A stretch of DNA of 64,000 nt. Source: Selaginella moellendorffii. Lineage: Eukaryota > Plantae > Lycopodiophyta. The notes beneath the pieces are model-generated. The model saw only the letters and a program-made list of their open reading frames with translations, had not been told where the DNA came from and did no database searches. Positions 66-51,157 of the stretch are shown piece by piece; position 1 is the stretch's first letter, and each line of letters starts with the position of its first letter. The translations under genes were made by a program, and so were the position numbers. Location: the NCBI RefSeq assembly GCF_000143415.4, contig NW_003314287.1, positions 1,200,203 through 1,264,202 of the forward strand, in the 5' to 3' direction.

Positions 66-3000
66 TCACTCGCTCACACCTTTGTTCTTGGCCGCCGCCG
101 CTGGCTTGCGATGATAGCTCGCCTCCTCGGATGCCGGGGCTTGAGCTAGCCTGGAGCTGGAAACGGTGGAGTCCGGTCGCCAGTACTGAGCAAATGGATA
201 ATTCGCTCCTCCTGCTGCTGCTGGTGCGGTTGATCCTGCTGCTGCTGCTGCCACCGCTGTGGATTTGGCACTGCTCGACGGCCTCGCGAGCTGGATACTC
301 GATGAGCTTGACGGCTTCGTTGCTACGTGATGAACTCTGGAAGCTCCAGTGGTTGTAAACACTGCCGTCGGTGGTGGTTTCTTCAGGTTGGCTGGCTTTA
401 TCTGGCTGGGAGACACGCTCGTCTTCATCTCCACTGGTCTTATCTCGATCATCCCGTTCGGCTTGGAGACTGGCTGCAGCCGGGGCTGCTTGCCCGGCCT
501 CTGGAGCTTGGCGACATCGGTCGGAGGTTGCTGGCGTTTCACTGGAGGGTTGTTTTGGCTCGGCGTTGCCTTGGGAACTACAGAGATCGCTGCTGCTGCC
601 CAAATTGAAGGTGTCATCTGCGATGCTAGCCTGTGCATGAGTAAAGTTAGAATTTTAGAGCTCACAATTCTTGTGTAGGTACCTGAAGCGGGTTTCACAG
701 ACGAGCGACCGGATACTCGAGCTGGACGGTGGTTCGGCGGTCTTTGGTTTCCCTGGTCTGAGCGTTACGTTCACAGGCCGGAAGTCCTCCATCTCTTCTG
801 GGCCGGAAAAACTGAGAGACAATTCCAGCGGAGGTTGGCTCTCGACGTCTTCATTGTCGTTGTCGCTGGCAGTATTGTTCTTCACGGCCTTGCAAGCATC
901 AGGCATCTTTCCATTGTCACTGGCAGTCGTCTGAGATAGAGCCTCCGCTACCAGCGCGTGCCCCTGCTTGTGAGAAGCCTGCCGCAACGGTGGCTTCAAG
1001 CAACCTTGACAGAGATTTGCCAGGGAGACGAACGGAAGGTTTCGGGGATGTCCAACGTTACTCACGAAACCGTTCCTCGACTTTGCGGACCCCTTGTAAG
1101 AGTCTTTCACACTCTGCACTGTAGCAAAGTGTCTCTGTAGCAACACCTCCTTGTCAGGAACTCGCTGCACTAGCTCTAACAAGCGCTTTGTGTCTTCCTG
1201 CATCAACCAAACCAAAAACAGACCAATTTTTCAGCTGCAGAATGAAACGAAAGCGTAACACATACCTCTGTCACCTTGATAACAGCCCCAGATAGTAATC
1301 TCTCGCTGCTCATCCCCCCGCAAATGGTACCAGCGTTCTCGACTACGAGCTGCCTAAATCTATCTTTACACTTAACAGGGTGCCTGTGCCGACCTCTATA
1401 CACTCCGCCGTCTGGCATTCCTTCTAAGGCATCGCTAGCCAGAAGCCAATTTCCACCATACTCGTGCACTACAGCGCACAGGACCTCGTCCTCCTCGGGC
1501 ATCCAGTCTGTGTGATGATCCTTGGCCTTGAGTGCTTCCTTTCTTCGGTCTCTTTCCAGCAAGATGACTGGGCTCTTCCTTGCGGTCGTGCAAATAGTTA
1601 GCTTGCCACCAAACCTAGGCCTGAAGTACTCTGTCCTGCTATCCTCCTTCCTAAACCTTTTGTTCTCGCCGCCCTCCTCTTCCAAAAACCTCGAAAACTT
1701 GCGCTTTCGTTGAAAAGGCGTGCGTAGAGAGTTATCCCACTGCATGTCGTACTCTCCCTCGTCGGACGCAATGGAGAGTACCTCATCAGCTTCGTCGGCA
1801 TCAATGTGATCATCTGCTCCCGCGTCTTCCTCGGAACAAAAATTGTACTCCTCTACACTGCTTCTTTCTAGAGATTTCAGTTTCTTCTTCTTTGGTCTCT
1901 TCAGCTGCTTCTCGCCCTCAATCAGCCTGAAAGAAAAGTAAAGACTAGATTCAGATATCAAAGGATGTAGAATTACCTGTCAGCCTCTTGGAGCTCCTCG
2001 TCGTGCATCGCGTCCCATTGTGCTTGTAAGAGTTCCTGTATACCTTGTTAAACAAACATACAGAAATGAAAAAATAAAAACGAAACCTGTTGCTGGGTCA
2101 AGACTTCTACTTGCTGCCTATAAGCTGCATCGGCATTAGAAGTATCCCAACCTGCCAGAACAAAGTTAACACGGCTTATAACTTTGGACGATGCAAATAC
2201 GTACTCTCGTAAAGAAGTGGTTCATCATCCTCGTCAATATCCGCCTCCTGTTCTTCCTTGAGTTTCTCTATTTGTTCCAATTCCCACTCCTTTTCCTCGT
2301 AGGTTACTTGTGTTTCCAAAGCGCTGGTATCGATGATTGGATTCCAGAGATCCAAAAACTGAATCGCGTATCTCTCGATTGGCTTGAGTTGGTCTTCAAA
2401 GTTATTGCCGTGACCTGATGCTGCTGCTGCGGCCGCAAGCTGCTTCACATCAGCAAGCATGTCCACCTCCTCCTCGGCATCCAGAAGGAGCGGTTGAGGT
2501 TCCTTAAGCTCTGGTAACGACGGTGTTCCAGCAGTTTCAATTTCCGGTGACGGAACTTTGGTCTCGGAAACCTTTCCATCCTCCAAGTCGTCGGCACATT
2601 CGTCCTCCTCCACGCTTACATCTTCAGCGAACTCCTGATTCTCCGCGGCCTCTTCCAGCTCCACCTTTTTCATAGCCATGTAGTCGGCCTCGTCTTCGGC
2701 ACTTTTGAGTGCCGCATCTACGTCGGCATTAGAAAGCGGCTGGTCGGCACGCTTTGTAGTGTTCACACCGGACAGGAGTTCCATGGGATCAAGCTTCTTG
2801 AAAAACTCAGTGTTGTAGCCACCGCTCTGGATGACCAAATTGTCGAGGAAACGCTTCTGGTTGGCCTTTTTCAAAATGTTCTCCTCGATGGTACTCTCGC
2901 TAACCAGCCTGTATATGTGAACTTCACGCGTCTGGCCGATGCGATGACACCTATCCTGAGCCTGTTGATCCATCGCAGGATTCCAATCACTGTCATAAAA

Positions 3001-6000
3001 TATGACTGTATCGGCGCCAACCAGGTTGATTCCAACGCCTCCGCTTCTCGTCGACAGGATGAACAAGAAGATCTTCGGGTTCGTGTTGAATCGTTGCATG
3101 AGAATTTGCCGCTGTTCAGGTTTGGTAGAGCCGTCGAGCCTCATGTAGTTGTAGCCGTAGAGGTTGATAAAACTCTCCAAGATGTCGAGCATCTTTGTCA
3201 TCTGCGTGAAGATCAGCGCCCTGTGACCTTCCGATTTCAGCCGCCGCAGCAGAACTGAAAGCTGCTGGAGCTTCCCACAATCGAACTGGAGGAGCCTCCT
3301 ATCCGGGAAAAACAGTTGCTGCCGCACAACGACCGGACGCAGCGGTGCCACCAAGTCACTCATCTCCGCAAGTTGATTGCTCGGGAAGTCATGCCTCAAG
3401 ATTGAGGAGGCAGACTGTCTGCTGCACCAAATGAGCGGCGGGGGAGCCCGAGCTGCTGGTATGACGAATACAAAAGCCTGTAGCAGATCCAGGAGACTCT
3501 CGCACCATGAAGATGGAAGCCTCACCACCTCGGCTATCGCTGAAGGGAACGTCAAGTAACGAGAAGGATCTGACTGTATGGCATGAATACCATAAACAGG
3601 GTGCTCCACCTCGACGTGCTTCGCCAGCCCACGACCATATACCACATGCCTGCTGCATCGCAGTATATTGAGCCACCCAAATTGTCGAGCCTTTTCTCTT
3701 CTCCTCTTCAGTCTCTGCGCTGCCAAAGCCGCTTGAATCTCTTCGAAAATGTTCTGCGGTTCAGTCACCTGTTCCTGTTCGTTCCAGCTATCTTCACCAC
3801 TGGTGGCAATCTCTTCAATGAGAGGCGTTGGCGTAGCAAGTTCAGCGAGCTCCGATGGTTCCCAGGCCTCCATGTCTTCCGACAGGAGATAGTTCAACAC
3901 TTCGAGGTTCACTGTCGAAAAAGGCTTCTGCTGGACGGCCGTGCACAGCTCCGAGCACATCTGAAGCTCGAGGCCCGGCATGTCGAAGGAAGACACGATT
4001 GGTCTGCTCTCAAACAAGTCGGGATGATTGCAGACCTTGCGCAACTGCATCAGGACGTTGATGAGTCCTAAGAAGTTGCCGCCCGACAGAGTTGCTTGTG
4101 TGTCAGAACTGGCCATGAAGTCCTCGTAGAGATTGCGTTGCCGCTTCGAGAGCCTACATGGCACTACATGCTCGTGCTTCCCCGGGAGCTGCTTCTCAAC
4201 GTCGCGCTTCAAGCGCCTCAGGATGAAAGGTCTCAGCACATTATGCAGCCGATCCACCACGTCCTGGTTTACTTTGTCCTGGCCTTCCACCATCCCGCTG
4301 ATAGGATTGCTGAACCAGTCTCGAAACTCTTGATGCGACTGGAAAACGTGTGGCATCAGGAAGTGCATCAAGGACCACAGCTCCATCAAATCGTTCTGGA
4401 GAGGAGTTCCCGTCAGAAGGATCCTTCTCTTGGAGTTGAAGTTCAACAGCATCTGCCAGCGTTGAGATTTCCAGTTCTTTATAAGGTGCGCTTCGTCGAG
4501 AATGAGATACTTCCACTTCTTCCGTTTGAAGGCCTTCGCGTCCTGGATAACCAGCCTGTATGTCGTGATGCAGACATGGAAGGAGTTCGCCTTCGACCAC
4601 CCTTGCCGCTTTATCTTGCGCTCTTTTGCGTTGCCGAAGTACGTTAGGACCTTGAAAGCGGGACACCACTTCATGAACTCTGTTTCCCAGTTGAGCATCA
4701 CGCTTGTCGGCACCACTATCAAATGAGGTCCCCAAATGCCTTTCTCACAAGCCAAGTGAGCTAACAAGGCAATTGTCATGATCGTCTTGCCAAGGCCCAT
4801 CTCGTCTGCCAGAATTCCGTTCAGCCGCTTCTCGTACATGGTGACCAGCCAGTCCAGTCCTATGTGCTGATACTCCCGCAAAGAATGCTTCAGCAAGAAG
4901 GGAATCTTGGTCCTCACTCTTGTCGTAGAAAATGTGTATCCTGTTGGCTGTGCAGACAGGGCAGCAGCAGCAGCGTCGTCAAGCTCCTTCCTACCGGTCT
5001 TCCCAGATCCCTCCACTCTACTACTATCATCTAAACCAGCTCTTTTTCTCATGCGTTCCCCTCTTTGTTGAGCAGCTCGGGCTACATTAGCCAGCACTTC
5101 CGCCTCCTGCTCCGTGCCGTAAAAAATCTTGCTGTCTCCTGTAGCTTTTGATCTACCCGTACTCTTGATGATCAATAACGAACTTCGACCGCTAGTACTA
5201 GGTTCGCCCATTCTCTCTTTAGCCTCATCGGAGCTATCAGAAGGCGCGTCACTAGCACCGCCCTTCTCGTCTCCTGAGCTCTCGGCACGCTCCTGCATCA
5301 AGGTATGTAAGCTACTGTGTGCACTGTAAAGTAGAACTTACCGCACGGTATCGAGACAAAAGCTCTGAAACGGGCAACTCATTTTCCATCTTCAGTTGCT
5401 CAAGCTTCAATACCATGCAACATTCCATTAGTCAGAGCGAAAAAACACTTGAAAAAGTACCGTACCTCAAGGTTAACGTCTTTGTTCTCTGCCATCGCTA
5501 GCTTTTCCTCTTCGTCGAAAGTCCTTTCGTCGTCCTACAATCAGAAAGTGATTTAAGGAAGAATAATCTTCCAAAATTTACCTCCTCTGACGCATATGCG
5601 GTATGAGGATCGTATTCCTCGTCATCCTGCATAAGAAATCCCAACTTCAATAAGAATGCGTTCCCTCAAGCCTCTACAGGCTGCCTAAATGATGGGTATC
5701 TTACCAATTCTTTATCTTGGTCGGCGTCGGAGGTACTTCTCTCTTCCTCACTATTATCACCTTTGAAAGACAACCGTTGGTGAAAAACAAGAAAACAGTA
5801 ACATAGCTGATGACGAAACCTTTTGCATATAGACCAACAAGCTCCTCTATTGGCAGCTCGCTCTCCCTCTGAAGCGCATTCAGTTCTTCCTTGCGCTCGT
5901 CTTCGGTGATCAGCGCTTCGTCGGCTTCGAGAGTGGCCTCGTCATCCTGCTACACCGTTTGTGTTAGAAAAATTATAATTATCAGAACGAACTGCGTTAA

Positions 6001-27203: not shown

Positions 27204-30056
27204 ATGTCCAGTGTCCCCACGCCTGCATCCGGATCGACACTTTCCCACCGACAATTCAGCGAAGACGCTCAATCTCATGGCACAGCCAAATTGCCAGCAG
27301 GAGCGGCGGCGGGAGCTTCGTGCCCGGAGCACGAAACTTCCAAAATCCGCGCGCTCAATCCACTGGCCAGAGAGTTTGTCCCTGGTATGTCACTCCTTTC
27401 ATTTCGAACGAGTAGAAATTTTCTAATTTCCTTGTGATTGTGATTTTACACATTGTAGTTGAGGAGGGATCTCCTTCTTCGCGGTCTCCGACCAAGAGAA
27501 CATCGGTAAGCATGATGATGCTCGTTTCCCAAACACCGAGTTTTTTTCCCTTTTCTAGAGTCGTGAAGGATTTCCTTCAGCACCAAGGAACTTCTCAGTA
27601 AGTGTTCAAGTTTTTTTTTCCCATAAAGCGAGGATTTGATCTGATTGCGTTTGACATGAGCAGGATCACGACGCCGCAGCTACAAGCTCCGAGGCAAATA
27701 GTGGGGTGAAGGAAAATTGGGTGGAAAGTGGCATGCCCCACAAACAGTCACAAAAGCTGCAAGAAGTAACAGGAGGACTCTCAGCCGCTCTTAAAGTCCC
27801 TCAAGCAGGAAAAAGTTCTCTCAAGATGGGACACGAATTTACTTCTTCTCAGCACTCAACCCAGCCATCATCTTCACGACGCGGACAGACATGGAACGCG
27901 AATCATCTACTTAACTTTCACTACGATCCCATCGTTCGACCGTCCCCAAGGCCTCCTCAGCGCAGGCAGCATCAGAAAGTTCAGGCTTACGACAAAGAGC
28001 TCTTCTTGCAAGCAAACTTTCGGTTCTTGGTCTCGGATTTTGGGGACTATTTGGAGAACAGCACTGACCCAGACAAGATGCTCGAGTGGGAAGACATAGC
28101 CATTGTGGAACTCTCGTCCTCGGTGGCTATCCAGTGTCCGATATGCTTGGAAAGTCCACCTCTGTGCCCACAGATCACGTCGTGCGGTCACGTCTTTTGC
28201 TTCCCATGCATTCTACGATACTTCTCCGACGCGGACCACAAGACTCACGTAAAGAAATGCCCGCTCTGCTTCGGCATGACTTCTCCTAAGGAGCTGCGCA
28301 CCGTCTACATTCACAACGTGAAGGAACACAGGCCAGGTGACAATGTTGGCTTTACGCTCTTGACGCGGGATAAAGGGTCTGTTATACCGTTCAAAAGAAA
28401 CGAGTCGAGGGGATCACCGGCTTACACCAAGGATGGACGTTGCCATCTGTACTCCAAGTTTACACTGACATGCGACGTCGAGATGACAACAAACAATGCC
28501 GTTTCGGAGCTCACAGCATGGGCTGAGAGAGCTCAGTCGGGCGATGACGAAGACATCGAACAGCTGCCTTTTGTGTTTGCGGCAATCGATGAGCTTAAGT
28601 CGAGAAAGGCTGCTTGGGACGAGCACCGGACGTTGGAGTTTATCTCGAGCAGCCCATCTGTAAGGCAGAGAATTATGGCTCAGGTGAAGGCTGGAATCAC
28701 AAAGCTGCCTGGAGAAGACTTCGAAAGTTCTAGCTCAGCTGGAAAACACCATGAAAAGCAGGAAGTGTTGGAACCGTCGCCGCCGAAGCAAGAAGGCGTT
28801 TATCACATCAATCCGTTCACTGATGAACGAGAGTTGGTTGATGTAGACAAGAAGCCAAAATCGAAAGATTTGCATCAAGAGGACGCACCAGAGGACTGGG
28901 AATCCATCACTTCACCTGTGAAGACCGCGACTTATAAGGACGCCAAAGACGCTAAACACGAAGAGACTGATTCTTACAGCTTTTATCAGGTTCGTTGTAT
29001 CATTGCGGGGTTTTACTGACGTGTTCTCTTGCAGGCCGCAGATGGTCAACTCGTCATTTTACATCCTTTGACAATGAAATGCTTGGTTCACCACTATGGA
29101 TCGTACACGTCTTTGCCTTCGAGGTAATTTCTCTTGCATGTTTTTCTATTCTGATTGCTTACGATGTTCCAGAGTTGAAGGGAAAATACTTGAGATGGAA
29201 GCAATGATTCAAACCGAGCTGTCGAGAAAACGATACCGCTATTTGAGTCATCTACCACTTACTAGCACCTTTCAGGTAATTTGGATATTTACAAAGTTAC
29301 AACAACAGATTATTCTGATTCTTAAACCAGCTGTGCGAGGTGGACCTCTCAAAAATCTTACCAAGCTCGTCACTGTCTCCCTTCAAGGATGAGCTACATG
29401 CTCGAGAGGTTCGCAGACAGAGACGCCTGAAACAGGTACAAGATTTGTTTCTCCTAGGCAGAATTGTCGAGCGAAATTTGCATTCAGGACAAGATGCTTA
29501 AATCTGCTGGGCAAAGACTTGAAGAGAAAGTGGTGCCACCATCTCCAGCAGACTACATCGCGATCATGAACGCCCTTCACGAAGACGAAGTTCCAAACGA
29601 CAGTGAGTTTGTCGGTAAGTCTCAAGTACAAATGCTCACACTCGAAACTCACCCGCCGGATTCTTCAGCCGCTTCTACAGCACCAGTCCCGGCCTCGTCT
29701 CCACCTGTCGACGAGAGGAGACTCTTCTCGAGGGTGGCCAAGCTCGGCTTTGCTTCTGGACACGATGCTCCGGATCTCACGAACGACGGTCTCTCCTCTA
29801 ACAGGCCACCGATCCAACAACAGTCGCCATGGAACCAAAAACAAGCTCCGGCTGGAAGCAGCAGCGGTGAGTGTGTTCCAATTCCTGCTCTGTTCGCTAA
29901 TCTTCCAGCTCGAACACTCTTGCAGGAGGAGCTTCCCTTTCTTTCGCGGACGCCATACAGAGAAAAGTGGAGAAGAAAACTCCAGAGGCTCCCTCGCGTG
30001 GAGCAGCCCGCAAAGGCAAAGTTTTACTTTCTACTGGCAGTGGAAGAAAGTACTGA
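27204..30056 (+). CDS. RNF10/Mag2-like C3HC4 RING E3 ligase with N-terminal PAM2-like motif
   Basis: NANHLLNFHY, YDKELFLQANFRFLV, CPICLESPPLCPQITSCGHVFCFPCILRY...CPLC, FYQAADGQLVILHPL, RKRYRYLSHLPL and a C-terminal VLLSTGSGRKY*. N-terminal LNPLAREFVP. Confidence 0.88.
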
Positions 30057-30195
30057 ATAGTCAATGTGTTAATATAAATACAAAGTGTTCAAAGGGTCAA
30101 TGGTGTTTATGGTTTTATTCTCGAATATGCCTTTGGAGATATTTGTGCTGAAAGATCAGCTTTCTTGGTTGCTCCAGGACAGACAGTGCACTCCT

Positions 30196-30365
30196 CAAGA
30201 GCTTGCATCCCGACTTCAACTACAGGTATAACAAAAACAAACTGTTTTCTAAACTGAAATCTGTGACACTCTCTAAACTGCCAACAATGTAGGCGTTTCA
30301 TTAAAAGTTTCAGACCTCTGAGAACGATGGCGACGAGGAGATCTATCCTCAAGCAGCCCCAGATG
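30196..30365 (+). pseudogene. Degenerate fragment of the neighbouring subtilase gene (exon-intron-exon)
   Basis: GCTTGCATCC..ACTACAGGTA..CTCTCTAAAC..CAACAATGTAGGCGTTTC..TCAGACCTCTGAGAACGATG..GGAGATCTATCCTCAAGCAGC is collinear with about 35179-35390, including the intron. Confidence 0.75.
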
Positions 30366-30958
30366 GTTTATTACAACAGTTCATAGTCTTCATGGCCACA
30401 TACAAAACATCTACTAAGCATATAATACTTTTGAAGCAAATACTAGGGCCTCCATAGTTGATATTCTATCCTCCACACTAGCATTCTGTTGTGTGAGCTG
30501 TGCATTCTGCTGAGCAAACTGTGCAATCTGCTGTGTGATCTGTGCAATCCTTGCATCTTGAACCTCCAATCCTTGCATCCTGACCCACTGTCACAGGTTT
30601 CACCATCTCCAACCTTGCTCTAGCAATGGGTATCATGGGAAGGCTTGGCTTGAGAACACGTTTCCACGCCTCTTCCAAGCCTCCTTGCCCTTGAGCTTCA
30701 TGCCGGCTATGTTCTCTCGCCTTTACGTTGTCCCAATGAACATCAGATGGTTGATCTAATAGAGCCCTAATGGCATTGACTCACCTTCCAAGAACCTGAT
30801 TTCACAATCAACAACACTCACAGTGCAAAACCCTAAAGTGATTGCCAAAATATCTGTTAACTGTTCTTCCCGAATATGCCTTTGAATATATTTGTGTGGC
30901 TAAAATATCTAAAGAACCCTAGAGCGCCGATGATAATGTGAAAGACCGGCAAGGGCAA

Positions 30959-32692
30959 ATGCTGATGGCGCAGGTAGTGAGCTTGCAGGCGCCAGTGCCG
31001 GGGATTCGCGCGGCGGGGGCGCTGGACAAGGATGCGCTATCCAAGCAGCAGCAGCAATGCGCGACCAATTTCTCGTCGCCAGGTTTGCGCTGTTCTTCCA
31101 CTCAGCTCGGGCAGGGCCGGGATTCGGCCGTGTGTAGGGCTAGGATAGGCAGGACATGGCCGAATCCCAACTACAAGCCACCAGAGGGCGATGGATGGAA
31201 CACCGGATCGACTGGAAGCTCGCTACCGTGGAATGAGGGCGGGGGAGGCGCTGCCCAGGCGGATTCTCAGTGGAACAACCAAAATGCCGCCGGAGGCAAT
31301 GGGCAGCAGCAGAGTGGCGGCTGGAACAGCAATCCGCAAGGCTCTTGGAACAATCAAAATTCTGCGTGGAACAACCCGGCTCATGGAAATCAGAGTTTCT
31401 GGAGCAATCCACCGGGCGAGCAGCAGGGTTCTAGTTGGAACAGCGGTCCTGGCTCGCAGCAAACTTGGAACGCTGGGAATCAAGGTCAGAACACTGGTTG
31501 GAACAACAACGATTGGAATAAAAACTCGTCGGGTGGTGGTTCTTCGTCTTCGTGGAACAGCGCTGCCAATGCAGTGATTGATGTCACAAACACCACTACT
31601 CCTGCTGCTCCCGCTCCTCCGGCTCCTCCCGCCGCCAACACTACCACTGGAACGGGATGGAACAACCAGTTTGGAGGCAGTCCTTCCCCGAGCTTCAACT
31701 CTTCCGTAGCAACGAGCACTGCTTCTACGACTGCTCAAAGTCCGATTCCAACCGGAAGTACGGCTCCAAGTTCACTCTGGGATACTACGCCGGCATCCGA
31801 TGCTCCAAAGCTAGGTGGTGCTACGACCGTCACTGGCGATGCCACCACCACTTCCACTCCGACCGAGTCTCCAGCAATCGGGGGCCTCGCTCCTCAGAAG
31901 CTTTACCGCGACGAAGACGGCTGGCCCAGTCCGTTGCTGGATCCCGAGTACAAGCCCTCGGACGAGAGCTTTTCGTCCGGGTCTTTTCGAAGCTCATCTT
32001 TCGGGAAAGGTGTCGGGAAGACATGGCCGAACCCAAACTACAAGCCACAGCCCGGTGACAACTACGTCTACTCGTCTGGCGGCTCTTCGTTTAGCAAATA
32101 CGGCAGCGGGAAGACGTGGCCAAATCCAAACTACAAGCCAGAGATGAGTGATGGTCGTGACAACTTCGTGTCCTTCAGCAAAGGAAGTGGCAAGACATGG
32201 CCGAATCCGAACTACAAGCCGCAACCTGGCGATCCTCCGTTCGTTAGTGGCTCCGGCAAAGGTGGCACTGGAAAGACTTGGCCGAATCCAAACTACAAGG
32301 GTGATGATCCGACTTATGTCTGGGGTGGTGGTGGCAAAGGCAGCGGGAAGACATGGCCCAATCCAAACTACAAGGGTCCTCCCCCGATTTACGTGACCGG
32401 AGGAGGCAAAGGTGGAGGAAAAGTTTGGCCGAATCCAGATTACAAGGGTCCTCCTGTCGGCCCCGAGTTCGCAGGATCCACGAAGAAAGGAGGGAAGACA
32501 TGGCCGAATCCGAATTACAAGGGAGACGATCCAACGTACGTAAGGGGTGGCAAAGGCAGTGGCAAGACATACCCGAACCCAAACGTGAAGCCACTTCCAG
32601 GAGAAAACCCATGGAATGCGTAAGTTCATCTGTTTCCTTTTCTCTTTCTTTCCTCTTGTGACCTGACGTGTTTGTTTTGCAGGCGGTGGTGA
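30959..32692 (+). CDS. Orphan low-complexity repeat protein: transit-peptide-like N-terminus, W-N-rich domain, T/P linker, about 9 GKTWPNPNYK repeats
   Basis: 561-codon open frame with repeats conserved at the protein level despite synonymous variation. A probable terminal intron 32620-32682 (GTAAG...TTGCAG) gives the C-terminus PWNARW*. The start is uncertain (ATG 30959 or 30965). Confidence 0.75.
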
Positions 32693-33004
32693 ATGTTAAG
32701 TGACTCAACGAGTAATTCTCATCTTTCTTTTTGTATCAGCATCGCACCACGTAGGTACGCATCTGAAGTTAGTCTTGGAACTGTATGGCCTTTAGTTCTA
32801 TCTGAATATCATTTGCTGTTTCTTATCCCGAGTTCTATTGTTGGTGTTTCTTATCCACTTTAAACTAAGGCGCTCGTACCTTGGTCTAAACTGACTAGTG
32901 GTGCCGAGTAAATCGTGGAAAAAATGTCGAGCGAGATTCCTGTAAGCCTTTTGTTTCTCAGGTTGGCTTGAAATTCTTCCGCGTGACCCGTTGCTTCTTT
33001 GTCC

Positions 33005-35838
33005 ATGGCCAGCTTTCGAACAGTAGCATTTTTCTTTGTTTTGCACTTCACAGCATTCATCGATGCAACATCAAAGGTGTAACTGTTTGCTGAATTTGTT
33101 TTTTGGTTCGTGTGTGCTTTATATACTTGTTTTCCACAGTCATATATTGTTTATCTGGGAGGGCCTTTAGAAGAGGGATACAATGTCGCTTATCTTCACC
33201 ACCAAAAGCTATCTACAGTTCTTGGGTACAAGTTACACTTCTTTCTTTACAAAATGAGCTTACTTTCAGAACCAGACACGAGCTTGCCAAGGAGGCAATG
33301 CTATATAGCTACAAGCACCTCTTCAATGGATTCTCAGCAGTTATCCCACCTGACAAGGTTGAGAACATTTCAAGTATGTCTCGAAGACTTTATTATTGCA
33401 AGTAATAACGTAGTTTGAATTGTTTTGCAGAGTTGCCTGGCGTTAAGATGGTCCTGGAGGACAAAGTGTATAGACTCCAGACGACGAATTCGTGGCAGTT
33501 TCTCGGTCTCCAAAATATGAATGGAACCGTTGCAAATGGAAAGATCCAGCAAACTAGAAATAACGGCGGCCAAGATGTTGTGATTGGTATGCTTGACACA
33601 GGTACGAATACCGTGTGATTGCTGTCCTTAAGACGACTTTTCTTGTGAATTCTTCAGGCATTTGGCCAGAATCGGCAAGCTTCGATGATAGCTCTTACGG
33701 TCCGGTCCCAGAAAACTGGAATGGTTCTTGTGTAAACACCACGGATTTTAGTTCCACAAGCGACTGCAACCGGTGAGCTTTTTCAACACTCCATTTGTGA
33801 ATGCCAACAGCATGTTATATCACACAGGAAAATAATCGGTGCCCGATTTTATTTTCAAGCCGCAAATGCGACGCAACAAGACGAGTCAATCCTGCTATCG
33901 CCAAGAGACACCGAAGGCCACGGCACGCACACGGCATCCACCGCAGCCGGAAGTTTTGTCAGGGATGCAAACTACCGCGGTTTTGCTCGCGGAACTGCTC
34001 GAGGTGGCGCGTATGGAGCTCGGCTCTCGATTTACAAGACGTGCTGGAACAATTTGTGCTCGAATGCTGACATTCTGGCAGCGCTTGACGACGGTATCGG
34101 GGATGGTGTGCAAGTTTTCAGCATCTCACTGAGCGGTGAAGGAGCTATCCCTGAGACAAAGGATCCACTGGCCTTTGGAACGCTCTATGCGGCCATGCAT
34201 GGGATTTCCATCGTTGCAGCGGCGGGAAACTATGGTCCTAAGTATGCCACCGTAAGCAATATAGCACCCTGGATGATTACCGTTGCTGCTACCACAACTG
34301 ATCGGGCCTTCGCCAGCAACGTCATCCTCGGCGACCTCTCGAGCTTCATGGTAAGGAAAACGTATTTTTTACAGGAGCTTAATTGCTTACTTCCAGGGTG
34401 AAAGTTTATCAGAAGCTGCACTGCAATCTGGATTCTATCCCCTCGTCGCGGCTTCCGATGTTTCCCTTGCGAACATCTCAAGGTAACTATCCGCTTGTTA
34501 CCCTTTGCAGAAGTTACTGTAACTTTGCTGTGATTGAAACAGTGACTTGAGCATGATGTGTATTCCTGGAGCACTCGACCCTCAAAAATCGCAGGGTAAG
34601 ATCGTCTTGTGTTCAGACAGTGGTGTTTCTTTAGTTGTGAAAGGAGTGGCTGGTGCACTTGCAAAGGCTGCGGGTTTGATCATTTACAACAGCGAAATGC
34701 AAGGCGAGACTTTAGAGGCTGTGAATTATGGCCTGCCTGCAGCAAACGTTGGATACAAAGCTGGACAGGCTATTGTTGCTTACATGCAATCGACTGGGTA
34801 ATTTCTCTCTATGCAATTTTTTGTGGTTTTAAGTTTGTCATATGATCATATTATCCTGTTGTTTTTTACAGGAATCCAACGGCATATATAACTCGTTCTG
34901 TGACATCAACTAGTGGTAGACCCGCTCCGGAAGTTGCTGCATTCTCTGGTCGAGGTCCAAACTTGGTTTCTCCAGAGATTGTCAAGGTACTTGGAAGCAG
35001 TTTACTCTGGAACTTTCAGCTAAAACTTCTTTCTTGGTGATGTAGCCTGATATTGCTGCTCCAGGAGTAAGCATACTAGCCGCGTACAGCGAATTTCACA
35101 AAACAGACAGTTATGTGGTCATTTCCGGAACTTCCATGTCCTGTCCACACGTCACGGGAATTGTAGCGCTTCTCAAAAGCTTGCATCCGAACTGGAGCCC
35201 AGCAGCAATTCAATCAGCTATCATCACTACAGGTAGAACACAAAGAATCTGTTTTGTATGCTCAAATCACTGACGCTCTCTAAACAGGCAAGACCACCAA
35301 CAACGTAGGCGTTTCGATAAAGGATCAGACCTCCGAGAACGATGCGACGCCTTTTGACATCGGTGGCGGGGAGATCGATCCTCAAGCAGCAGCAGACCCG
35401 GGACTTGTTTACGATGCCACTCCTGGAGACTACTTTCTATTCTACTGCCAAAAACTCAAGCTCCAGAAAGCGCCGGTCTTGGACGCGGATTGCAGAGACA
35501 CCGAAACCGAGTCGTTTCAGCTCAACTATCCCTCCATCTCGGTGTCTCTCAAGCCTGGCACGGCTGCAAAGATCACCCGCAGGCTAAAGTCCGTGATGGA
35601 AGGAACTTCTACGTTTCACGCCAGTGTCCGTCTTCCTACAGTGGCCTCGCTGACCGTCTCGGTGAGGCCCTCGGCTCTAAACTTCACCCAGCAAGGCGAC
35701 GAAGCATCGTATAAGATGGAGTTCTCATTGGTGGAAGGATTTTCCACAAAGCAAGCTTATGTCTATGGCTCCTTGACGTGGAGCGATGATCGAGGCTACC
35801 GAGTACGCAGTCCCATGGTCATCAAGCTGGAAGCATAA
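33005..35838 (+). CDS. Subtilisin-like serine protease (S8, I9 propeptide, PA domain), multi-exon
   Basis: Signal peptide [16 protein letters not shown]9 motif [13 protein letters not shown]. Catalytic motifs [25 protein letters not shown] and [12 protein letters not shown]-terminal QLNYPSI and YGSLTW. Confidence 0.93.
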
Positions 35839-42400: not shown

Positions 42401-44342
42401 GGGTGCGGTTCCATTACGGACATCCAGATGTATTCGACAGACTCTTTCACATAACAAGAGGTGGCATCAGCAAAGCTTCAAAAGTTATCAATCTGAGCGA
42501 AGATATTTTTGCTGGTAAACTTAATGTTCTAAGGTTACATCACTAGATAAGTGAGTACTGCAGGGTTCAATTCAACTTTGCGACGAGGAAATGTAACACA
42601 TCACGAATACATACAGGTCGGGAAGGGCCGTGATGTTGGACTGAACCAAATAACACTTTTTGAGGCAAAAGTAGCAAACGGGAATGGTGAACAGACTTTG
42701 AGTAGAGATATCTATCGACTCGGCCATCGTTTTGATTTTTTCCGCATGATGTCCTGCTATTTTACAACAGTTGGTTTCTACGTCAACGCCCTGGTATGAA
42801 ACTGGTTTGTTCTGCTTCCATCATTCTAAAGATACTTTGTGCAGATCGTGGTGCTCACAGTCTATGTTTTTCTCTACGGACGGCTGTATCTATCATTAAG
42901 TGGCATGGAGAAGTCGCTGTTAAAAGTTGCAAACATGAAGAAAGACGTGAGCCTGCAAGCTGCCTTGGCCTCCCAATCGTTGGTTCAGCTTGGATTATTG
43001 ATGGCACTTCCAATGATCATGGAGATCGGTCTTGAGAGGGGCTTTCGTACAGCAATCAGCGACTTCATCATAATGCAGCTTCAACTGGCTTCCGTTTTCT
43101 TTACCTTTTCTCTCGGCACCAAGGTTCACTATTTCGGTAGAACGATACTGCACGGAGGGGCAAAGTACAGAGCTACCGGCCGAGGCTTCGTCGTTCGTCA
43201 TGAAAGATTTGCTGAGAATTATCGGTTATATTCGAGAAGCCACTTCACCAAAGCGTTGGAACTCATGATCCTGCTGATTGTCTACGTAGCTTATGGTTCG
43301 TCCGGGAATGGTGCGGTCGCTTATATGTTCATCACGGCTTCTATGTGGTTCCTGGTGGTCACCTGGCTATTCGCTCCCTTTCTGTTCAATCCGTCAGGTT
43401 TCGAGTGGCAAAAGATCGTGGAAGACTGGGACGACTGGAACAGGTGGATTGCTAACTCGGGAGGAATAGGAATTGCCGCGGTGAAGAGCTGGCAGTCCTG
43501 GTGGGACGAGGAGCATTCCTATCTCAACCACACAGGCTTGCGTGGTAGAATCATGGAATCTCTCTTGGCGATACGCTTCTTTCTGTATCAGTATGGCCTC
43601 GTCTACCACCTCAACATCACCAGCGGTCACAAGAACATTCTGGTAAGTCCATTCTGTTGATGCTTATTTTATAGCGTTGCGTGTCTGCTTGCAGATATAC
43701 GCTCTGTCGTGGCTTGTGATAATCGGCATTTTGATCGTTTTAAAGGTAACCAGCGAGTATTCTTTCGATACAAGAAACTTATGCCATTTTGTAATTTTTT
43801 GTAGATCGTGTCGATGGGACGAAGACGCTTCAGTGGTGACTTCCAACTCATGTTCCGGCTCTTAAAGGGGATGCTCTTCATGGGATTTGTTTCGATAATC
43901 ATCATACTCTTCGTGGTGGTTGGCCTGACGGTCGGAGATCTCTTTGTCACGCTACTCGCGTTCCTCCCAACTGGTTGGGCCCTCTTGCAGGTAAAGCTAT
44001 CGACACCAGACTCTTCCTCTTTTCCTTACCAAACTTCCACCAGCAAACTGGCAGCCTTTTTCTTACTGACGCTTTGATTAACTCTCTCTTTTGCTTTTGT
44101 TCTCCGCAGATAGGAATGGCGTGCCGGCCACTGGTGGAATCGATGGGCTTCTGGGGCTCCGTCAGGGCCCTGGCACGGAGCTATGAGTTCTTCATGGGGC
44201 TGCTCATCTTCACGCCCGTTGCGATCCTGGCGTGGTTCCCATTCGTGTCCGAGTTCCAGACGCGGCTACTCTTCAACCAGGCCTTTAGCCGGGCCTCCAG
44301 ATCTCTCGGATCCTTGCGGGCCGGAAGAAACTCGGTGAATGA
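36459..44342 (+). CDS. CALS: Callose synthase (GT48, GSL/CalS), many exons; apparent 1-nt frameshift near the C-terminus
   Basis: [111 protein letters not shown] and [13 protein letters not shown]. It includes GC-AG-type donors at about 40023 and 41157. Confidence 0.95.
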
Positions 44343-50083: not shown

Positions 50084-51157
50084 ATGCTCCGGACGATCTG
50101 GAATGCGCTGTGCCGGGCGATTGCCTGGATCGGCGTCCGGATCCTCCTCTGCGGCCCAGTGCCGCAGCACATCGCGATCATCATGGACGGCAACAGGCGC
50201 TTCGCGGACAGGGCCGGGATCGACAGGAAGAGCGGCCATGGATTTGGCTACGATAGCCTCATCCAGACGCTGGAGCTGTGCTTGGATCTGGGGGTGAGGT
50301 ACGTAACAGTGTACGCATTCAGCATCGACAACTTCGCGCGATCGCAAGAGGAGGTGAGCGCGCTCATGGAGCTCATGCGTGAGAAGCTGGACCTTCTCGT
50401 CTCCAACGAAGGGCTGGCCACCGCGAAAGGGATTCGCGTGTGTGTTCTTGGAGACTTGACCTTGCTCCCGGAAGATGTAAGAGCTTCCGCGAATCGAGCG
50501 ATGGCCGCGACCAAGCACAACTCCATAACCGTGCTTAACATATGTGTGGCCTATACATCCACGCAAGAGATTGTCAACGCTACCAGAGAGGCTGTCAAGG
50601 AAGCTCTTGGATTGAGCTCATCGAAGGTACTGGACTCATATTTCCTTAGCTCTTTCTTGTTTGTTCTTGACGGATTTGTTTTTCAGTCCGGTGGTTCTCA
50701 ACTTACGAATGAAAACGATGGAAGGAACTCACTAAAGGTGATCTCTCCTTCTCCCTCTCCCTCTTCTCTTTTGACATCCTTTTCCTTGTGCTTGTTTTGG
50801 CAGACTTTGGACTCGCAAATCACAAAGGAAAGCATCGAACGGCATCTCTACACGGCAGGATCTCCATGGCCGGACGTGCTGATACGAACCTCGGGCGAGA
50901 CGAGGCTAAGCAACTTTATGCTGTGGCAAGCTTGCCACTCGCACTTGGCCTTTTGCAACGTCCTGTGGCCCAACTTCTCCTTCCGGCACCTATTTTGGAT
51001 CATCTTCCAGTACCAGAAAAGCTACCGATCTCTACAACACCACTGGATCAAGGCCCAGAGCTTTTGGATCATCCTCCAGTACCAGAGAAGCAACCGATCT
51101 CTACAACACCACTGGCACAAGGCCCAGAGCTTTCAAACTCGCCAAAAGTTTGGATAA
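50084..51157 (+). CDS. cis-prenyltransferase (dehydrodolichyl diphosphate synthase-like)
   Basis: PQHIAIIMDGNRRFA, VTVYAFSIDNFAR, LNICVAYTS, PDVLIRTSGETRLSNFMLWQ and LWPNFS. Two probable short in-frame introns at about 50627-50686 and 50739-50803. Confidence 0.92.
   Translation: MLRTIWNALCRAIAWIGVRILLCGPVPQHIAIIMDGNRRFADRAGIDRKSGHGFGYDSLIQTLELCLDLGVRYVTVYAFSIDNFARSQEEVSALMELMREKLDLLVSNEGLATAKGIRVCVLGDLTLLPEDVRASANRAMAATKHNSITVLNICVAYTSTQEIVNATREAVKEALGLSSSKVLDSYFLSSFLFVLDGFVFQSGGSQLTNENDGRNSLKVISPSPSPSSLLTSFSLCLFWQTLDSQITKESIERHLYTAGSPWPDVLIRTSGETRLSNFMLWQACHSHLAFCNVLWPNFSFRHLFWIIFQYQKSYRSLQHHWIKAQSFWIILQYQRSNRSLQHHWHKAQSFQTRQKFG
50993..51130 (+). repeat. 69-bp tandem duplication in the cis-prenyltransferase C-terminus
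   Basis: Units start at 50993 and 51062 and encode FWIIFQYQKSYRSLQHHWIKAQS / FWIILQYQRSNRSLQHHWHKAQS. Confidence 0.9.

What the first reader, a model, noticed from the sequence alone, without database searches (positions are those of the whole stretch)
30959..32692. Orphan, probably plastid-targeted sticker-and-spacer protein with about 9 GKTWPNPNYK repeats and a W-N prion-like domain
Seen: the N-terminus resembles a transit peptide ending in VCRA. One WPNPNYK follows it, then about 15 xWN/xWS units in a G/N/Q/S-rich tract, a T/P/A linker, and eight more near-identical G(K)TWPNPNYK(P/G) units with synonymous codon variation, which implies selection on the peptide. No globular domain is recognisable. 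Several units also fit GxxxxGKT (GKGGTGKT, GGKGSGKT). Inference: a multivalent linker or condensate scaffold analogous in architecture (not homology) to algal Rubisco linkers such as EPYC1, or a starch-, membrane- or nucleic-acid-binding scaffold.
Basis: partly seen in the sequence, partly recalled or inferred. Interest (0 to 1): 0.7.

Follow-up and report, generated by a model that had tools for sequence, protein, structure and literature searches.

The report
Expressed orphan tryptophan-repeat protein, Selaginella
A spikemoss gene missing from public protein sets is transcribed, spliced and polyadenylated, and encodes a probably disordered protein with nine selected copies of the peptide GKTWPNPNYK plus a tryptophan-asparagine tract; it has no detectable relatives and its role is untested.

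Summary
Window 30959-32692 (+) is a real two-exon gene: contigs from transcriptome-sized runs in three studies cover about 30917-32825. They lack a 63-nt GT..AG intron (32620-32682) that a DNA-run contig keeps, and two of them end in poly(A) at 32825.

The 556-aa product has four parts:
- a 63-aa basic N-terminus that looks like a presequence
- a G/N/S/Q tract with 13 tryptophans
- a T/S/P/A linker
- eight 23-31-aa units built on GKTWPNPNYK, plus one copy at residue 64 and one degenerate copy

The motif is under peptide-level selection. Among the copies pS is 0.57 and pN 0.08. The listed allelic SNPs in the repeat array are 6 synonymous and 0 non-synonymous, against 1 and 8 in the W-N tract.

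No relatives were found. Pfam, PDB sequences, the ESM Atlas and an exhaustive HMMER scan of 1.84 billion representatives gave only a mis-modelled, frameshifted partial copy in Selaginella moellendorffii. AlphaFold finds no fold.

Best reading: a lineage-restricted, disordered, multivalent scaffold. Plastid targeting and condensate formation are plausible but untested. An Argonaute-hook (GW-type) role for the W-N tract is a serious rival. The GxxxxGKT matches are a by-product of the repeat junctions.

The parts
30887..30893 (+). Candidate TATA box (TATATTT), about 25-30 nt upstream of the most 5' RNA contig end
   Evidence: Read in the sequence. RNA contig 5' ends lie at 30917, 30928 and 30934. 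This is an inference only.
30917..30958 (+). 5' UTR, containing a 3-codon uORF (ATG ATA ATG TGA, 30930-30941)
   Evidence: Contig starts in runs X3, X4 and X1; sequence.
30959..32619 (+). Exon 1 coding sequence (553 codons plus 2 nt)
   Evidence: ORF; covered by RNA contigs from three studies.
30959..31147 (+). N-terminal 63 aa, presequence-like: pI 9.6, A/Q/S/L-rich, no W, ends ...AVCRARI
   Evidence: Composition and hydropathy. The maximum 15-residue Kyte-Doolittle mean is 1.25, so there is no signal-peptide core. Targeting itself was not tested.
31148..31177 (+). First motif copy, GRTWPNPNYK
31184..31678 (+). W-N tract (residues 76-240): 13 Trp flanked by N/S/G, spaced 5-17 aa (the last is 35 aa away). 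The composition N17 G15 S14 A10 % was computed over residues 64-260.
   Evidence: Among the listed allelic SNPs here, 8 are non-synonymous and 1 synonymous, and none removes a W.
31679..31993 (+). T/S/P/A-rich acidic linker (composition and pI 4.1 computed over residues 261-345), containing the degenerate motif WPSPLLDPEYKP at 31922-31957
32015..32619 (+). Array of eight 23-31-aa units starting with GKTWPNPNYK. It is basic (pI 9.8) and rich in G, P and K.
   Evidence: All 6 listed allelic SNPs here are synonymous.
32620..32682 (+). 63-nt GT..AG intron
   Evidence: The joint 32619->32683 is present in contigs of X1, X3 and X4. It is absent from DNA run X12, whose contig spans 32234-33730 unspliced.
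32683..32692 (+). Exon 2 coding part: completes Ala554, then Arg, Trp, stop
32693..32825 (+). 3' UTR, with the poly(A) site at 32825
   Evidence: Loose ends of A9 plus adapter (X1) and A8 (X3) at 32825.

Best explanation
This is a lineage-restricted (Selaginella) nuclear gene that is expressed and absent from the public protein sets searched. It encodes a probably disordered, bipartite multivalent protein. Module 1 (residues about 76-240) is a near-neutral to acidic G/N/S/Q tract. Only its 13 tryptophans look constrained, so it reads as aromatic 'stickers' in freely evolving spacers. Module 2 (residues 353-556) is basic and carries eight units of GKTWPNPNYK plus a (Y/F)V/GGKGS spacer. A ninth motif sits directly after the N-terminal 63-aa presequence-like segment. 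The motif has two aromatic residues and two lysines around two Asn-Pro turns, and it is kept by purifying selection. Inferred mechanism: the nine motifs act as repeated short linear docking or self-association sites. They would use cation-pi and aromatic contacts, possibly against the oppositely charged W-N module, so that one chain can cross-link several partners or copies of itself as a scaffold or condensate former. Shown: transcription, splicing, polyadenylation, repeat anatomy, peptide-level constraint, and the lack of relatives or a predicted fold. Inferred: disorder in vivo, multivalent binding, and the compartment (a plastid is plausible, perhaps 35-40%).
For: Expression and gene model: (contigs from three studies, intron removed, poly(A) tail; a DNA run keeps the intron). 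Anatomy. Selection: motif copies have pS 0.57 and pN 0.08. Listed allelic SNPs are 6 synonymous and 0 non-synonymous in the repeat array against 1 and 8 in the W-N tract, Fisher p=0.0014; overall pN/pS is 0.28. A 3-nt in-frame indel lies in the poly-Q run. No fold: AF2 mean pLDDT 36.5 for exon 1 and 42.5 for the repeat array alone. No family: Pfam, PDB, ESM Atlas, word search, exhaustive HMMER, literature. Opposite charge of the modules, pI 4.4 against 9.8. A functional precedent for W- and Y-containing repeat stickers is PYCO1 (PMC10288592).
Against: No binding partner, localisation or phase behaviour was tested. The AF2 runs used a single sequence, where low confidence is weak evidence for disorder, and short beta bridges recur at GKTW and xYVx, so a repeat fold is not excluded. 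The SNP table was truncated ('10 more are not shown'), so the synonymous and non-synonymous counts are partial. Orthologues in other lycophytes could not be searched at the DNA level, so 'orphan' means 'no annotated or predicted protein relative'. Depth figures cannot rank expression.
Confidence: 0.5

Rival explanations
1. It is an Argonaute-hook (GW-type) protein. The W-N tract would bind the tryptophan pockets of AGO PIWI domains in the cytoplasm or nucleus, and the basic C-terminal repeats would act as an effector or RNA-binding module. This would make it a lycophyte-specific silencing cofactor.
For: The tract has 13 W in about 155 aa, flanked almost only by N, S, G and T, with a typical spacing of 7-17 aa. 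Its composition (N17 G15 S14 A10 W7 %; L, I, M, Y and C nearly absent) matches the scoring of AGO-binding domains by Karlowski et al. 2010: W and G highest, then N, S, A and D; L, I, M, Y and C least expected (PMC2910046). The spacers evolve freely while W is kept, as that paper describes for NRPE1 platforms.
Against: Only 4 of the 13 are GW and none is WG; 12 of 13 are W-N. The N-terminus looks like an organellar presequence. There is no other silencing-related domain. The strongest selection is on the C-terminal motif, not the W tract. No Wsearch-type scoring was run.
Confidence: 0.13
2. It is a plastid condensate linker. After import, the repeats would bind Rubisco, starch or another stromal client multivalently, as EPYC1 and PYCO1 do.
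For: The architecture parallels PYCO1: a transit peptide, a prion-like region, pI about 10, and repeated KWSP and GTGYNP aromatic stickers (PMC10288592). Here the K-T-W-P and N-P-N-Y elements sit in one motif. The N-terminus is presequence-like.
Against: Hornworts are stated to be the only land plants known to form pyrenoids (PMC13655443). Linker families share no homology, so the resemblance cannot be tested by sequence. The unit spacing of 23-31 aa is shorter than the roughly 50-aa spacers of EPYC1 and CsLinker. Targeting was not predicted by any tool. S+T is only 14% of the first 63 aa.
Confidence: 0.08
3. It is a non-specific protective hydrophilin or LEA-like protein: an abundant disordered solute or shield under water stress with no dedicated partner.
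For: Gly is 15% and GRAVY is -1.03. From my own knowledge, this meets the hydrophilin criteria of Gly above 6% and high hydrophilicity. Contig word depth is high in every RNA run laid, which is only a weak indicator.
Against: There is no Pfam LEA or dehydrin match. Exact conservation of a 7-10-aa aromatic motif with saturated synonymous sites points to a specific contact rather than bulk physicochemistry. S. moellendorffii is, to my knowledge, not desiccation-tolerant.
Confidence: 0.1
4. It is a transcribed but functionless young ORF, that is, noise or a recent de novo gene.
For: There are no relatives outside the genome. The composition is low-complexity. A decayed second copy exists.
Against: pN/pS is 0.14 among motif copies and 0.28 between alleles, and the frame is preserved by a 3-nt indel. 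A spliced, polyadenylated mRNA is present in three studies. The paralogous copy shows what decay looks like, with frameshifts and deletions, and the window copy shows none.
Confidence: 0.05
5. It is a secreted structural, cell-wall or biosilica-associated repeat protein, like PPVYK proline-rich proteins or Lys/Pro-rich silica-precipitating proteins.
For: The repeats are Pro/Lys/Tyr-rich and end in YK. Selaginella deposits silica (my own knowledge).
Against: There is no hydrophobic signal-peptide core; the maximum 15-residue hydropathy is 1.25 at the N-terminus. RNA 5' ends leave no room for an upstream coding exon.
Confidence: 0.03

Closest known systems
PYCO1, the diatom pyrenoid Rubisco linker (Oh et al. 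2023, PMC10288592)
   Same: A tandem-repeat, mostly disordered, basic (pI about 10) protein with an N-terminal targeting peptide and prion-like regions. Its function rests on short repeated aromatic motifs with a critical Trp next to Lys and Pro (KWSP) and a Tyr next to Asn-Pro (GTGYNP).
   Different: There is no sequence homology. PYCO1 repeats are about 80 aa, against 23-31 aa here. The W and Y elements here are fused into one 10-aa motif. The host plant has no known pyrenoid. Binding and localisation are untested here.
EPYC1 / CsLinker (green algal Rubisco linkers)
   Same: Sticker-and-spacer architecture, high pI, plastid presequence, lineage-restricted with no homologues.
   Different: Their stickers are short helices spaced about 50 aa apart (PMC13655443). 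Here the motif is proline-rich and cannot be helical, and no helix is predicted.
WG/GW Argonaute-binding platforms (NRPE1, SPT5L, GW182; Karlowski et al. 2010, PMC2910046)
   Same: The W-N tract shares the defining compositional signature: W, G, N, S and A enriched; L, I, M, Y and C depleted. It has many Trp in a non-conserved, repeat-like disordered context.
   Different: The predominant dipeptide is W-N rather than WG or GW. The tract is attached to an unrelated basic repeat array and a presequence-like N-terminus. AGO binding is untested.
Decapeptide adhesive and structural repeats ending in Y-K (mussel Mfp-1 AKPSYPPTYK; plant PRP PPVYK). This comparison rests on my own knowledge.
   Same: A short Pro-rich repeat combining an aromatic residue with Lys, a chemistry that favours cation-pi cohesion.
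   Different: Those proteins are secreted and hydroxylated. This one has no signal peptide, and its motif is embedded in a longer 23-31-aa unit.

Membership tests
Rubisco/pyrenoid linker class (EPYC1, CsLinker, PYCO1) | Repeated sticker motifs separated by disordered spacers, high pI | tested here: met
   There are nine motif copies, the C-terminal module has pI 9.8, and AF2 finds no fold.
Rubisco/pyrenoid linker class (EPYC1, CsLinker, PYCO1) | Plastid stromal localisation | not testable with these tools
   Only compositional features of residues 1-63 are available; no TargetP or ChloroP was on hand.
Rubisco/pyrenoid linker class (EPYC1, CsLinker, PYCO1) | Host organism forms a pyrenoid or Rubisco condensate | tested here: not met
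   Literature only: hornworts are described as the only land plants with pyrenoids (PMC13655443).
Rubisco/pyrenoid linker class (EPYC1, CsLinker, PYCO1) | Binds Rubisco and demixes with it | not testable with these tools
   This needs biochemistry.
WG/GW Argonaute-hook proteins | Multiple Trp in a domain enriched for G, N, S, A, D and depleted of L, I, M, Y, C | tested here: met
   13 W. Residues 64-260 are N17 G15 S14 A10 %, with 1 L, 1 I, 0 M, 1 Y and 0 C, compared with PMC2910046.
WG/GW Argonaute-hook proteins | WG or GW dipeptides as the conserved core | tested here: inconclusive
   There are 4 GW, 0 WG and 12 W-N among the 13.
WG/GW Argonaute-hook proteins | Physical binding to AGO PIWI tryptophan pockets | not testable with these tools
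   This needs co-IP or a pull-down.
P-loop NTPases (Walker A GxxxxGK[ST]) | Walker A motif within a beta-strand/loop/helix of a Rossmann-like fold | tested here: not met
   The pattern is present 3 times, but each GKT is followed by WPNP. There is no Pfam P-loop hit and no helix or fold in AF2. The pattern arises from the GGKGS|GKT repeat junction.
LEA / dehydrin / hydrophilins | Match to LEA or dehydrin family profiles (K-, Y- and S-segments) | tested here: not met
   Pfam gives 0 families at E<=1.
LEA / dehydrin / hydrophilins | Gly above 6% and high hydrophilicity | tested here: met
   Gly is 15.3% and GRAVY is -1.03.
Secreted proline-rich / HRGP wall proteins | N-terminal signal peptide | tested here: not met
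   The maximum 15-residue Kyte-Doolittle mean is 1.25, so there is no hydrophobic core.

The most novel reading that the evidence does not exclude
A vascular plant without a pyrenoid encodes a plastid-imported, PYCO1-like sticker-and-spacer scaffold. Its nine K-T-W-P-N-P-N-Y-K motifs would cross-link a stromal client (Rubisco, nucleoid, starch or thylakoid surface) into a condensate. That would be convergent evolution of an algal-type linker in lycophytes, which have unusual monoplastidic cells.
Probability: 0.07. Interest if true: 0.8.

Novelty: new variant of a known kind. Interest (0 to 1): 0.42.

Why it matters
The locus adds a well-supported gene to a model lycophyte genome: its protein is missing from the public protein sets searched, and only a decayed copy was ever modelled. 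It also offers a compact, natural sticker-and-spacer protein in which selection separates the constrained parts (the WPNPNYK motif and the tryptophans) from the free ones (the spacers). If the W-N tract binds Argonaute, it would be a lineage-specific silencing cofactor in a plant group whose small-RNA machinery is poorly known. If the protein enters plastids and forms condensates, it would be a land-plant analogue of algal linkers, which is relevant to pyrenoid engineering. With no localisation or partner known, it remains an interesting orphan rather than a mechanism.

Tried and rejected
1. P-loop NTPase reading of GxxxxGKT: rejected. The pattern is a repeat-junction by-product, with no fold and no Pfam hit.

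2. Homology to any family: Pfam, PDB sequences at E<=10, ESM Atlas for both modules, two word searches and the exhaustive HMMER scan. All were blank except P0001.

3. P0001 (SELMODRAFT_424337) as a true homologue: rejected as a functional relative. Its locus L001 is a frameshifted, truncated, non-syntenic partial copy with one intact motif, and the 483-aa model is stitched across frames.

4. Recovering the other haplotype or allele through neighbouring genes. The RNF10-like ORF gave no near-identical protein (best 58%). An exact look-up of the cis-prenyltransferase ORF found nothing. A full allele-versus-allele dN/dS was therefore not possible, so the SNP table was used instead.

5. Literature search for the motif strings: no paper.

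6. Antisense ORF 31994-32629 (211 aa): dismissed. The GT..AG intron and the poly(A) tail fix the + strand.

7. Secreted protein: no signal-peptide core.

8. A DNA-level tandem array or recent gene conversion as the cause of motif identity: rejected by TRF and by pS 0.57 between copies.

Full report
**What is there**

The + strand of window 30938-32623 carries a 561-codon ORF. Its first ATG is at 30959.
- a 63-aa N-terminus (MLMAQVVSLQAPVPG...AVCRARI)
- one RTWPNPNYK copy
- a G/N/S/Q-rich tract with 13 tryptophans (residues 80-234; 12 followed by N, one by S)
- a T/S/P/A linker containing a degenerate WPSPLLDPEYKP
- eight units that begin GK(T/V)(W/Y)PNP(N/D)(Y/V)K

The motif occurs nowhere else in the six frames of the 64-kb window. 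Tandem Repeats Finder finds no DNA-level array.

**Is it a gene?**

Yes. Twenty public runs from seven studies hold at least 59% of the sampled words of window 30700-32900. I laid contigs from three transcriptome-sized runs (X1, X3, X4, from three studies) and one genome-sized run (X12) on window 29800-34200.
- The three small runs cover about 30917/30928/30934 to 32825 and nothing between 32887 and 33327.
- All three carry a joint 32619->32683 that removes 63 nt with GT..AG ends.
- X1 and X3 end at 32825 in untemplated A runs (in X1 followed by the adapter).
- The DNA run's contig crosses 32234-33730 without the joint.

The mRNA is therefore transcribed from the + strand, spliced and polyadenylated.

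Two allelic versions of 31353-31478 are both present in the RNA runs. An in-frame AGC insertion lengthens the poly-Q run in two runs.

The upstream gene is an RNF10-like RING protein (27706 to about 29983). The downstream gene is subtilase-like (from about 33100). They are separate transcripts on the same strand.

All searches and folds used exon 1 by reference. The joined 556-aa product was assembled only inside local scripts, for counting residues, and was not sent to any search. Exon 2 adds three residues and is too short to search.

**Selection**

Among the nine motif copies, synonymous sites are close to saturated (pS 0.57), while pN is 0.08, a ratio of 0.14. The identity of the peptide is therefore not due to recent duplication or gene conversion.

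I classified the 23 CDS differences listed:
- 12 are synonymous and 11 non-synonymous, giving pN/pS 0.28 (binomial p=0.0025 for an excess of synonymous changes).
- They are very unevenly spread. The repeat array has 6 synonymous and 0 non-synonymous changes. The W-N tract has 1 synonymous and 8 non-synonymous, none removing a Trp (Fisher p=0.0014).
- Caveat: states that 10 further differences were not shown, so these counts are partial.

The pattern is what a sticker-and-spacer protein predicts: constrained stickers, free spacers.

**Relatives**

| Search | Result |
|---|---|
| Pfam, E<=1 | none |
| PDB sequences, E<=10 | none |
| ESM Atlas, either module | no usable hit |
| Word search, whole protein and residues 335-554 | P0001 only |
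| Exhaustive phmmer, 1.84 billion cluster representatives | P0001 only (E 7e-13) |

P0001 is SELMODRAFT_424337 of Selaginella moellendorffii. Its locus (L001, GL377631.1) shows the following:
- It matches the window only over about 0.8 kb, at 66-94% identity in pieces.
- It is frameshifted and deleted and keeps a single intact motif.
- It lies between unrelated genes, with no synteny.

So P0001 is a decayed dispersed copy whose 483-aa model is an artefact. The window's own protein is not in the searched collections, so the functional gene appears to be unannotated.

Earlier notes of this scan call this genome Selaginella moellendorffii. My evidence fits that: the only relative is from that species, the DNA runs hold about 205-210 Mb of contigs, and allelic divergence is high. 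I could not prove it, because run organisms are coded, the RNF10 neighbour found no near-identical protein, and an exact look-up of another neighbour failed. Plant genomes could not be searched at the DNA level, so 'orphan' means no predicted protein relative.

**Structure**

Single-sequence AlphaFold2 gives mean pLDDT 36.5 for exon 1 and 42.5 for the repeat array alone. There are no helices, only 2-4-residue beta bridges recurring at GKTW and xYVx. This fits disorder but is weak evidence, and a repeat fold is not excluded.

The protein is strongly hydrophilic (GRAVY -1.03, Gly 15%). Its two modules carry opposite charge: pI 4.4 for residues 64-260 and 9.8 for residues 346-556.

**The N-terminus**

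Residues 1-63 differ in composition from the rest: A, Q, S and L are the commonest residues, net charge is +4, there is no Trp, and there are no acidic residues before position 23. There is no signal-peptide core. This is compatible with an organellar presequence, but S+T is only 14%, the V-x-A cleavage motif is approximate, and no predictor was available. I rate plastid import as plausible, roughly 35-40%, and not shown.

**GxxxxGKT**

The pattern occurs three times. This is more than in shuffles, but only because the GGKGS|GKT junction repeats. Each GKT runs into WPNP, no fold or P-loop family matches, so it has no NTPase meaning.

**Mechanism**

The best-supported reading is a lineage-restricted, disordered, multivalent scaffold. 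Nine selected W-P-N-P-N-Y-K sites, each with two aromatics and two lysines around two Asn-Pro turns, would serve as repeated docking or self-association elements. A Trp-studded low-complexity module would provide a second set of stickers. The opposite charges of the two modules could favour inter-chain association.

The closest functional precedent is diatom PYCO1. Its repeated KWSP (critical Trp) and GTGYNP (Tyr) motifs drive homotypic condensation and Rubisco binding in a basic protein with prion-like domains and a transit peptide (PMC10288592). The resemblance is one of architecture and chemistry, not homology. A Rubisco-linker role is unlikely a priori, since hornworts are described as the only land plants with pyrenoids (PMC13655443).

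A serious rival is an Argonaute hook. The W-N tract matches the compositional definition of AGO-binding WG/GW domains: W and G highest, then N, S, A and D; L, I, M, Y and C depleted (PMC2910046). However, only 4 of its 13 Trp are GW. Hydrophilin-like protection, a functionless young ORF, and a secreted structural protein are less likely, for the reasons given under the rivals.

**Verdict**

Gene, repeats, selection, orphan status and lack of a domain are supported; plastid targeting and condensate function are untested.
- Novelty: a new sequence family of a known kind, the sticker-and-spacer disordered repeat protein.
- Interest is moderate. The constraint pattern is clean and the gene is missing from the protein sets searched, but no function is established.

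Noticed in passing
L001:7333-8114 (S. moellendorffii GL377631.1; annotated SELMODRAFT_424337, P0001): The only database 'relative' is a frameshifted, truncated, non-syntenic partial copy of this gene with one intact WPNPNYK. The 483-aa public gene model is stitched across frames and is probably an annotation artefact on a pseudogene.
   Followed up: yes
window 27706-29983 (+): RNF10-like RING-finger gene directly upstream. A 59-nt GT..AG intron (29866-29924) is spliced in three RNA runs. The best database hits are only 58% identical, so this species' own RNF10 protein is absent from the searched length range.
   Followed up: partly
window 33100-34400 (+): Subtilase-like gene downstream (ORF pieces with VVIGMLDTG and AAAGNYGP motifs). 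It has small introns, 33599-33654 and 33772-33826, that are spliced out in RNA contigs. Contig depth is much lower than for the orphan gene.
   Followed up: no
window 30930-30941 (+): A three-codon upstream ORF (ATG ATA ATG TGA) lies in the 5' UTR, 18 nt before the main ATG. It is present in the longer RNA contigs.
   Followed up: no
window 30180-30337: DNA run X12 carries a structural variant in the intergenic region: 156 nt are replaced by CCG. It is probably an allelic or strain indel.
   Followed up: no
window 30460-30813: Low-depth contigs (depth 6-8, against about 290 for the gene) in RNA run X1 lie upstream of the main 5' end. They may reflect a minor upstream start, an unrelated weak transcript, or DNA carry-over.
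   Followed up: no
window 2176-5301 (-), 42839-43660 (+), 50084-51157 (+): Other coding pieces in the window: an SNF2-family helicase ORF (1041 aa), a callose (1,3-beta-glucan) synthase exon, and an apparently intronless cis-prenyltransferase ORF (357 aa). An exact look-up found no record of the last one's product in the public collection.
   Followed up: partly
window 31994-32629 (-): A 211-aa antisense ORF runs through the repeat array. It is a by-product of the repeat's codon structure, since the splice-site orientation and the poly(A) tail place the transcript on the + strand.
   Followed up: yes
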